Shown: positions 24,353-24,699 of the stretch, in pieces
Position numbering within the stretch: position 1 is the first letter of the stretch
Layout of the letters: every line of letters starts with the position of its first letter
DNA from: Euprymna scolopes
Taxonomy: Eukaryota
Direction: 5' to 3' (one strand)
DNA: 64,000 nt
Assembly: GCA_053919585.1 (NCBI GenBank)
Contig: CM132805.1
Position numbers and translations under genes: made by a program
Notes under the pieces: model-generated
Database searches by the model: none
The model's input: only the letters and a program-made list of their open reading frames with translations
Told to the model about the DNA's origin: nothing

Positions 24353-24486
24353 GGAGCGGTATAGCGCAACGGTTAGAAGCTCTCAGTTGTTTGGGCGATC
24401 GGGTTTCGATCCTGGCTTGAGGTAGTTGCTTGTCTAGCCGCACCGATCAACTGGAAAAAAGCGAAACAGTACTATATTTGGATGAC
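24353..24486 (+). mobile_element. tRNA-derived SINE with 3' hammerhead (core mutated)
   Basis: A-box TAGCGCAACGG and B-box GTTTCGATCC, then GTCTAGCCGCA-CCGATCA...GCGAAACAGTACTATATTTGGATGAC, then a microsatellite. Confidence 0.8.
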
Positions 24487-24496
24487 ACACGCACAT

Positions 24497-24559
<63 letters not shown>

Positions 24560-24644
24560 GATAGATATAAGAATAGATAGATAGATTGATATAGATAGAG
24601 ATATATAAAGATATATATATAATCCTGGCTTGAGGTAGTTGCCT

Positions 24645-24699
24645 GTCTAGCCGCACTGATGAGCTGTGAAACAGCGAAACAGTACTGTATGTGGATGAC
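24645..24699 (+). ncRNA. Type I hammerhead ribozyme with intact core
   Basis: GTC tag CCGCA-CTGATGA-GCTGT gaa ACAGC-GAA-ACAG ta CTGT-A^-TGTGG at GAC. Predicted cleavage is after 24689. Confidence 0.92.

What the first reader, a model, noticed from the sequence alone, without database searches (positions are those of the whole stretch)
24353..24699. tRNA-headed SINE ending in a hammerhead, with a duplicated, catalytically perfect second ribozyme
Seen: a tRNA-like head (24353-24415) followed by a mutated hammerhead. After a microsatellite comes a second copy of the 3' half whose hammerhead is fully canonical: bulged stem I GTC..CCGCA/TGTGG..GAC, 5-bp stem II, palindromic stem III ACAGTACTGT and a GTA cleavage triplet at 24687-24689. 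Known: a palindromic short stem III is typical of hammerheads that cleave as dimers. Inference: the two sites ~213 nt apart could once have excised a microsatellite-rich RNA, and the intact copy may still cut any transcript crossing it.
Basis: partly seen in the sequence, partly recalled or inferred. Interest (0 to 1): 0.85.

Follow-up and report, generated by a model that had tools for sequence, protein, structure and literature searches.

The report
Two hammerhead retrozyme copies in microsatellite
The region holds an old, dead copy and a young, cut-short copy of a very abundant non-coding jumping element of a mollusc genome that carries a self-cutting hammerhead RNA motif; it is a known kind of element (animal retrozyme), and this locus is an ordinary relic of it.

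Summary
The motifs are real and at the stated coordinates. The hammerhead at 24645-24699 has a complete canonical core (cut site 24689|24690). The one at 24432-24486 is mutated beyond function.

They are not a SINE with a duplicated tail. They are two separate insertions of a 284-nt unit that fills this 5.9-Gb genome:
- 7,357 exact copies of the 39-nt ribozyme core.
- About 11,000 element ends that run into (TA)n.
- About 4,100 head-to-tail unit junctions.

Copy A (24223-24486) is about 90% like the subfamily A consensus. Copy B (24622-24701) is a 5'-truncated stub identical to the younger subfamily B, inserted into the microsatellite tail of A.

The layout is conserved leader, tRNA-Arg-like A/B boxes, then a type I hammerhead with a weak palindromic stem III. 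It occurs in short tandem arrays with a fixed 3' end and variable 5' truncation. This matches animal non-LTR retrozymes and the schistosome Sm-alpha design.

Folding predicts cleavage as a dimer. RNA-seq shows the family in transcripts, with some unit-junction reads, but no pile of ends at the cut site.

The scan has already found this family on other pieces of this genome (e.g. s1-244820, s1-244821). Verdict: new member of a known kind; this locus has low interest.

The parts
24223..24486 (+). Copy A: old, nearly full-length unit of retrozyme subfamily A (consensus positions 20-284, about 90% identity)
   Evidence: Local alignment to the 30-copy consensus
24362..24412 (+). tRNA-Arg-like internal segment of copy A. 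A-box-like TAGCGCAACGG lies at 24362-24372 and B-box-like GGTTTCGATCC at 24402-24412.
   Evidence: Read from the sequence. Similar to genomic tRNA-Arg(ACG), z 3.4-3.6. Not called by ARAGORN or the Rfam tRNA model.
24432..24486 (+). Dead hammerhead of copy A. The core reads CCGATCA, stem II is lost, and stem III and stem I are mutated.
   Evidence: Its best fold is only -4.2 kcal/mol and is not a hammerhead.
24487..24621 (.). Compound microsatellite, (CA)n, (TA)n and (GATA)n-like. It is the tail of copy A and the target of copy B.
   Evidence: Genome-wide the family's ends abut (TA)n.
24622..24701 (+). Copy B: young 5'-truncated stub (consensus 207-286), identical to subfamily B. It has no promoter boxes.
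   Evidence: 98.75% identity to consensus A; the single difference is the subfamily B diagnostic C
24645..24699 (+). Intact type I hammerhead of copy B. Core CTGATGA is at 24656-24662, stem II at 24663-24675, GAAA at 24676-24679, and the palindromic stem III at 24679-24688. The predicted cut is between 24689 and 24690.
24702..24737 (.). (TA)n tail following copy B

Best explanation
The region holds two independent insertions of a high-copy, non-coding retroelement of the animal non-LTR retrozyme kind.

The unit is 284 nt. It consists of a ~150-nt structured leader, a tRNA-Arg-derived stretch with Pol III-type A and B boxes, and a type I hammerhead whose weak palindromic stem III makes it work mainly as a dimer.

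Proposed life cycle:
1. Arrays with two or more ribozymes are transcribed. This is probably by Pol III, since the + strand of the unit has no T4 terminator.
2. Neighbouring hammerheads pair through stem III and cut each other's sites, releasing a 284-nt monomer.
3. A host RNA ligase closes the monomer into a circle.
4. A reverse transcriptase, probably that of the young Penelope-like element of this genome, copies it from a nick in (TA)n DNA.
5. This leaves a fixed 3' end (...GGATGACTA), one or more units, and a variable 5' truncation.

At this locus copy A arrived long ago and decayed. Copy B, an 80-nt stub of the younger subfamily, later landed in A's microsatellite tail. With one intact ribozyme and no promoter of its own, the locus is most likely inert.

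Shown: family membership, copy numbers, array structure, end structure, the dimer fold prediction, and presence in RNA. Inferred: Pol III transcription, cleavage in vivo, circularisation, and the Penelope partner.
For: Copy numbers:
- Copies genome-wide: 1,860 first-look candidates, 40 scored at 87-89% identity.
- 7,357 exact 39-nt ribozyme cores, against 0 for the reversed control.
- 4,116 exact unit-to-unit junctions and 10,992 exact ends running into (TA)n.

Insertion structure:
- Arrays have a 284-285 nt period and the form [5'-truncated unit][full][full](TA)n.
- Solo copies are flanked by (TA)n on both sides.

Subfamilies:
- Subfamily B units are 97-99% alike between loci.
- A and B are 72.7% alike over positions 1-195 but 96.7% alike over 196-286, so the ribozyme module is held constant.
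- A compensatory change preserves the leader hairpin: ACAAT/ATTGT in A becomes ACGAT/ATCGT in B.

RNA properties:
- The double-hammerhead cofold is -36.2 kcal/mol, against 2 x -13.5 for monomers.
- The unit RNA folds with z = -2.0.
- There is no TTTT on the + strand and one on the - strand.

RNA reads: the family is seen in 4 of 4 runs. 'Goes back 284' joints appear in raw reads (7) and in contigs, including a 283-nt self-closing contig in a ribo-depleted library.

Candidate partner: the canonical Penelope-like element, with copies 98-100% alike, also ends in (TA)n.

Literature:
- Animal retrozymes are described in PMC7229834 and PMC7761336.
- A link between retrozymes and Penelope-like elements is proposed in 10.64898/2026.07.22.740005.
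- Penelope-like elements are biased to microsatellite targets (10.1101/2021.04.23.441226).
Against: - No Rfam hammerhead or tRNA call at curated thresholds.
- No pile of RNA ends at the cut site.
- The ratio of junction-crossing reads to (TA)n-running reads in poly(A) RNA is about 45:99. This is close to the genomic ratio of 4,116:10,992, so the reads may only reflect read-through of genomic copies.
- The RNA strand is unresolved.
- Short reads and contigs cannot tell circles from tandem transcripts.
- The retrozyme and the Penelope element share no sequence, and no Rfam hammerhead is found in the Penelope tail.
- tRNA descent rests on a modest score, and the tRNA was picked using a pattern taken from the element.
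Confidence: 0.85

Rival explanations
1. A tRNA-headed SINE had its 3' half duplicated locally, giving twin ribozymes that once excised the microsatellite-rich RNA between them.
For: Two hammerhead modules lie in the same orientation 213 nt apart.
Against: - Copy B is identical to subfamily B and carries its diagnostic base. Copy A is a ~90% subfamily A copy, and the two share no derived changes.
- About 100 other loci carry the same kind of stub, joined to (TA)n at the same point.
- Stubs and arrays are 5'-truncated all over the genome.
Confidence: 0.04
2. An ordinary tRNA-derived SINE mobilised by a LINE. The hammerhead is only a passenger in its tail.
For: - A/B-box-like motifs and tRNA-Arg similarity.
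- Dispersed copies with 5' truncation.
Against: - About 150 nt of conserved sequence lies upstream of the boxes, so a Pol III transcript of a solo copy cannot regenerate the whole unit.
- There are thousands of exact head-to-tail junctions at unit period.
- Copies have no poly(A) or LINE-like tail and end in (TA)n.
- The ribozyme module is the best-conserved part between subfamilies.
Confidence: 0.06
3. A satellite DNA spread by DNA-level processes (unequal exchange, segmental duplication), without an RNA intermediate.
For: Tandem units occur at a fixed period.
Against: - Arrays are very short (about 1-5 units) and lie at more than 10,000 dispersed sites.
- Every array ends at the same base before (TA)n and starts at a variable internal point. 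This is the mark of target-primed reverse transcription.
Confidence: 0.03
4. The intact ribozyme at 24645-24699 has been taken over by the host to cut a transcript of this locus.
For: The core is intact, and family members are present in poly(A) RNA.
Against: - It is identical to thousands of young copies, so its intactness reflects youth and not selection.
- No ends are seen at the cut site.
- The monomer fold is disfavoured.
Confidence: 0.02

Closest known systems
Animal non-LTR retrozymes (Cervera and de la Pena 2020, PMC7229834; review PMC7761336), e.g. those of the mussel Mytilus galloprovincialis, the coral Acropora millepora and the axolotl
   Same: - Non-coding units of 150-400 nt, each with a type I hammerhead.
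- Short head-to-tail arrays plus dispersed copies, AT-rich.
- Weak helix III that favours dimeric cleavage, as in amphibian retrozymes.
- Structured unit RNA.
- Penelope-like elements suspected as mobilisers.
   Different: - tRNA-type A/B boxes inside the unit are not a described feature of those families (no mention in PMC7229834).
- The strict (TA)n ends are unusually clear here.
- Circular RNA is not shown for this family.
- I found no published description in this lineage.
Sm-alpha / Sj-alpha SINE-like elements of schistosomes (Ferbeyre et al. 1998; Laha et al. 2000; from my own knowledge, papers not read here)
   Same: The design is the same: a unit of about 330 nt or less that joins Pol III A/B boxes to an active type I hammerhead, found both in tandem and dispersed.
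   Different: - The host phylum is unrelated.
- Sequence homology was not tested, because no Sm-alpha sequence was available from a tool.
- Here about 150 nt of conserved leader precedes the boxes.
Minimal hammerheads of Penelope-like elements that cleave as dimers (Cervera and de la Pena 2014; Lunse et al. 2017; cited in PMC7761336)
   Same: - Palindromic, nearly loop-less stem III with dimer logic.
- Shared preference for microsatellite targets with the Penelope-like element of this genome.
   Different: - This ribozyme keeps a full stem I with an internal loop and a 5-bp stem II, so it is the classical rather than the minimal form.
- It sits in a 284-nt non-coding unit, not in a pseudo-LTR.

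Membership tests
Hammerhead ribozyme, type I | Conserved core CUGANGA ... GAAA ... and a cleavage triplet NUH | tested here: met
   Copy B has CTGATGA at 24656-24662, GAAA at 24676-24679 and GTA at 24687-24689. Copy A fails this test, with CCGATCA.
Hammerhead ribozyme, type I | Three helices around the core, with helix I open-ended | tested here: met
   The stems can be read from the sequence. The cofold of two copies gives stems I, II and an extended stem III exactly as in a double hammerhead. The monomer's best fold is a different structure.
Hammerhead ribozyme, type I | Score above the curated Rfam threshold | tested here: not met
   No match at gathering score. The best match is Hammerhead_3 at 22.4 bits, cut-off 48.5. 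The Rfam models fit the short stem III poorly.
Hammerhead ribozyme, type I | Mg-dependent self-cleavage | not testable with these tools
   Needs in vitro transcription. RNA reads show no pile of ends at the site, which is inconclusive.
Animal non-LTR retrozyme | Head-to-tail repeats of 150-400 nt, each with a type I hammerhead, and no coding capacity | tested here: met
   Met for the family: 284-285 nt period and 4,116 exact junctions. Not met at this locus, which holds one decayed unit plus one stub.
Animal non-LTR retrozyme | Expression as unit-length circular RNA | tested here: inconclusive
   'Goes back 284' joints occur in RNA reads, and a 283-nt self-closing contig occurs in a ribo-depleted run. 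Tandem transcripts or DNA carry-over would give the same result.
Animal non-LTR retrozyme | Spread through an RNA intermediate | tested here: met
   Fixed 3' end, variable 5' truncation and more than 10,000 dispersed sites. The reverse transcriptase involved is not identified.
tRNA-derived SINE (Sm-alpha-like design) | tRNA-derived region with Pol III A and B boxes | tested here: inconclusive
   Boxes lie at tRNA spacing and are conserved in subfamilies A and B and in the 331-bp sister family. Similarity to tRNA-Arg(ACG) gives z 3.4-3.6. There is no ARAGORN or Rfam tRNA call.
tRNA-derived SINE (Sm-alpha-like design) | The tRNA-related part forms the 5' head of the element | tested here: not met
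   About 150 nt of conserved element sequence precedes it.

The most novel reading that the evidence does not exclude
The family is a currently active, self-transcribing Pol III retrozyme. Its dimer-only hammerhead means that only insertions carrying two or more ribozymes can act as new master copies. Its (TA)n tails seed further insertions, as at this locus. It has spread to more than 10,000 sites in a large mollusc genome, of a group whose genomes are reported to hold almost no SINEs (PMC13218726; whether this genome belongs to that group is my inference).
Probability: 0.35. Interest if true: 0.5.

Novelty: new member of a known kind. Interest (0 to 1): 0.3.

Why it matters
This locus by itself does not matter. 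It is a dead copy plus a stub.

The family matters modestly, for four reasons:
- It adds a lineage to the animal retrozymes.
- It repeats the Sm-alpha pairing of Pol III boxes with a hammerhead in an unrelated phylum.
- Its thousands of young copies show the insertion scars very cleanly: a fixed 3' end at (TA)n, more-than-unit-length copies, and 5' truncation. This bears on the open question of how retrozymes are reverse-transcribed and by which Penelope-like enzyme.
- Rfam thresholds miss it, so such ribozymes are under-counted in genome annotation.

Tried and rejected
- Rfam at gathering score on the whole window found nothing.
- Rfam at E up to 10 on the locus and on a near-consensus dimer gave only sub-threshold Hammerhead_3 and HH9 matches and no tRNA.
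- ARAGORN on the window and on six loci found no tRNA.
- A search for genomic tRNAs by the Rfam family returned only a tRNA-Thr cluster, which was useless for comparison. A pattern search then found tRNA-Arg(ACG). Because that pattern came from the element, the similarity test is biased in its favour.
- I tested for a truncation hot spot at consensus position 207. About 100 loci share it, against 6,886 with the intact upstream box and about 11,000 ends, which is near the uniform expectation. There is no hot spot.
- I looked for sequence shared between the retrozyme and the Penelope-like element and found none. There is also no Rfam hammerhead in the Penelope tail.
- Two scripts timed out and gave nothing.
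- The core-like match at 7909-7948 (-) has no stem II and is taken as chance.

Full report
**What is in the sequence**

The pattern CTGATGA, a short hairpin and GAAACAGTACTGTA occurs once in the window, at 24656-24689, and in none of 100 shuffles. Around it lie:
- a stem I with an internal loop (24645-24655 against 24690-24699);
- a 5-bp stem II (24663-24675);
- a 10-nt palindrome as stem III (24679-24688);
- a GTA triplet, so the predicted cut is between 24689 and 24690.

The upstream copy (24432-24486) has CCGATCA for CTGATGA, a destroyed stem II and further changes. Rfam reports nothing at its curated thresholds. The best sub-threshold match is Hammerhead_3 at 22.4 bits against a cut-off of 48.5.

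**It is a repeat family, not a local oddity**

A search of the window's own genome (5.9 Gb, 925 contigs) with 24345-24485 gave 1,860 first-look candidates. All 40 scored were 87-89% identical.

Aligning 30 copies with their flanks gave a consensus that starts about 150 nt upstream of the tRNA-like part and ends at ...GGATGACTA. (TA)n lies on both sides.

Exact-pattern counts:

| Pattern | Count |
|---|---|
| 39-nt ribozyme core | 7,357 (0 for the reversed control) |
| Head-to-tail unit junction | 4,116 |
| Element end running into (TA)n | 10,992 |

Many cores are spaced 284-285 nt apart. Four such arrays all have the form [5'-truncated unit][full][full](TA)n. A fixed 3' end, variable 5' truncation, more-than-unit length and dispersal to more than 10,000 sites are the marks of reverse transcription primed at the target, not of DNA-level satellite growth.

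**Two subfamilies, and what that says about this locus**

Array units (subfamily B) are 97-99% alike between different chromosomal sites, so they are young. They are about 80% like the consensus of the copies nearest to the window's first copy (subfamily A).

The divergence is uneven: 72.7% identity over positions 1-195 but 96.7% over 196-286. From position 207 on there is a single difference, T in A against C in B, in GTTGC(T/C)TGTC.

- Copy A of the window (24223-24486) aligns to consensus A positions 20-284 at about 90% and has the T.
- Copy B (24622-24701) covers positions 207-286, has the C, and is otherwise identical.

The second ribozyme is therefore not a duplicate of the first. It is a later, 5'-truncated insertion of the younger subfamily into the microsatellite that trails copy A. 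About 100 other loci carry a stub joined to (TA)n at the same point. That is roughly what uniform truncation predicts, so there is no hot spot.

**The tRNA-like part**

ARAGORN and the Rfam tRNA model call nothing here or in near-consensus copies. The segment does carry TAGCGCAACGG and GGTTTCGATCC at tRNA-like spacing. Both are kept in the two subfamilies, and a clean GGTTCGATCC is kept in the 331-bp sister family at 28726-29327.

The genome's tRNA-Arg(ACG) has the same D-arm and T-arm words at nearly the same spacing. Local alignment to it scores z 3.4-3.6 against shuffles. That tRNA was found with a pattern taken from the element, so the test leans in its favour. I rate tRNA descent as probable, and Pol III promoter function as inferred.

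One supporting detail: neither subfamily has TTTT on the + strand, while the - strand has one.

The segment is not a head. A Pol III transcript of a solo copy would lack the leader. Only transcripts that run from one unit into the next, or circles, can regenerate a whole unit.

**How the ribozyme should work**

- The monomer's best fold (-13.5 kcal/mol) is not the hammerhead. The hammerhead fold, with a 3-bp stem III closed by GUAC, costs -10.1.
- Two copies cofold into the textbook double hammerhead, with a 10-bp intermolecular stem III and each core facing the other's cut site, at -36.2 against -27.0 for two monomers.

This is the dimer behaviour described for newt, avocado sunblotch viroid, axolotl and Penelope-type hammerheads (PMC7229834, PMC7761336).

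In an array transcript, neighbouring ribozymes would release a 284-nt monomer. That RNA folds somewhat better than shuffles (z -2.0). Its leader hairpin is kept between subfamilies by a compensatory change, ACAAT/ATTGT to ACGAT/ATCGT.

At this locus copy A's core is dead and copy B stands alone, so efficient cutting is not expected.

**RNA evidence**

A permuted subfamily B unit (L032:840-1140) was laid against one raw poly(A) RNA run and three RNA contig sets. All four hold the family.

In the raw reads:
- Most matches continue into unlike sequence or (TA)n, as expected for copies embedded in longer transcripts.
- Depth is flat across the cut site, at 159, 169 and 157 in the three bins around it.
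- No pile of ends is reported.

Joints that 'go back 284' occur in 7 raw reads and in contigs. These include a 283-nt self-closing contig at depth 40 in a ribo-depleted library.

Junction-crossing reads against (TA)n-running reads number about 45 against 99. This is close to the genomic 4,116 against 10,992, so nothing shows enrichment of circles in poly(A) RNA.

First mates lie on the + strand in 75-95% of pairs, so one RNA strand dominates. Without a control gene its polarity is unknown, which weakens the 'no ends' result.

Subfamily B words are held by runs of 8 studies, mostly of one organism. Run labels point to a mollusc.

**Likely mobiliser**

The genome holds a very abundant canonical Penelope-like element, with RT followed by a C-terminal GIY-YIG domain. 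There are 15,395 first-look candidates, open frames reach 806-870 aa, and copies are 98-100% alike. Its 3' end abuts (TA)n at two alternative points 26 nt apart.

Penelope-like elements are known for microsatellite targets (10.1101/2021.04.23.441226), and a recent preprint derives animal retrozymes from them (10.64898/2026.07.22.740005). I found no shared sequence and no Rfam hammerhead in the element's tail. The link rests on the common target only.

**Comparison and verdict**

The family fits the animal non-LTR retrozymes in unit size, tandem and dispersed layout, ribozyme type and dimer logic. It repeats the Sm-alpha pairing of Pol III boxes with a hammerhead.

I found no paper describing it in cephalopods or other relatives. 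A cuttlefish genome paper reports almost no SINEs in decapodiform genomes (PMC13218726). That this 5.9-Gb genome, with more than 46 chromosome-sized contigs, belongs to that group is my inference only.

Earlier notes of this scan reached the same reading on other pieces of this genome. I treated them as leads and re-derived the counts and structures here.

The finding is real but is an ordinary pair of relics of a known kind of element.

Noticed in passing
window 28726-29327 (+): About 1.8 tandem units of a 331-bp sister family with the same layout: leader, tRNA-like boxes with a clean GGTTCGATCC, then a hammerhead with stem II GUUGU/ACAAC. This is a compensatory change relative to GCUGU/ACAGC. 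Already noted by the scan as s1-295495.
   Followed up: partly
window 27133-27205 (-): A short 5'-truncated hammerhead stub of a third family, set inside (TA)n. Its stem III is ACA-GGAU-UGU (3 bp plus a tetraloop) and is not palindromic.
   Followed up: partly
window 7909-7948 (-): A CTGATGA...CGAAAC match without a stem II. Most likely chance.
   Followed up: partly
L096:851-3177 (-) and L078-L095: A very young canonical Penelope-like element (RT then C-terminal GIY-YIG), with copies 98-100% alike. Its 3' end abuts (TA)n at two alternative ends 26 nt apart. Its tail holds a near-hammerhead, CUUGAAGA-hairpin-GAAAC, that Rfam does not call.
   Followed up: partly
G000:C11:1.68-2.16 Mb (L035-L064): A large cluster of tRNA-Thr genes. 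ARAGORN finds 128 distinct sequences in 30 loci, mostly Thr(TGT) and Thr(AGT).
   Followed up: no
L065-L076: Dispersed tRNA-Arg(ACG) copies share upstream and downstream flanks. This suggests a tRNA-Arg-headed repeat rather than only true genes.
   Followed up: no
L015:1676-1770: An inverted pair of minimal hammerhead-like motifs with a loop-less palindromic stem III (ACACGUGU), of the Penelope type, next to a retrozyme copy.
   Followed up: no
L032:540-580: At the 5' junction of an array, a 12-nt piece of the unit (AAACTCACTACT) plus TA-rich filler is repeated three times. This looks like template-jump stutter.
   Followed up: no
L032:840-1140, run X22: First mates lie on the + strand in 75-95% of read pairs, so one RNA strand dominates. 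Its polarity could not be fixed without a control gene.
   Followed up: no
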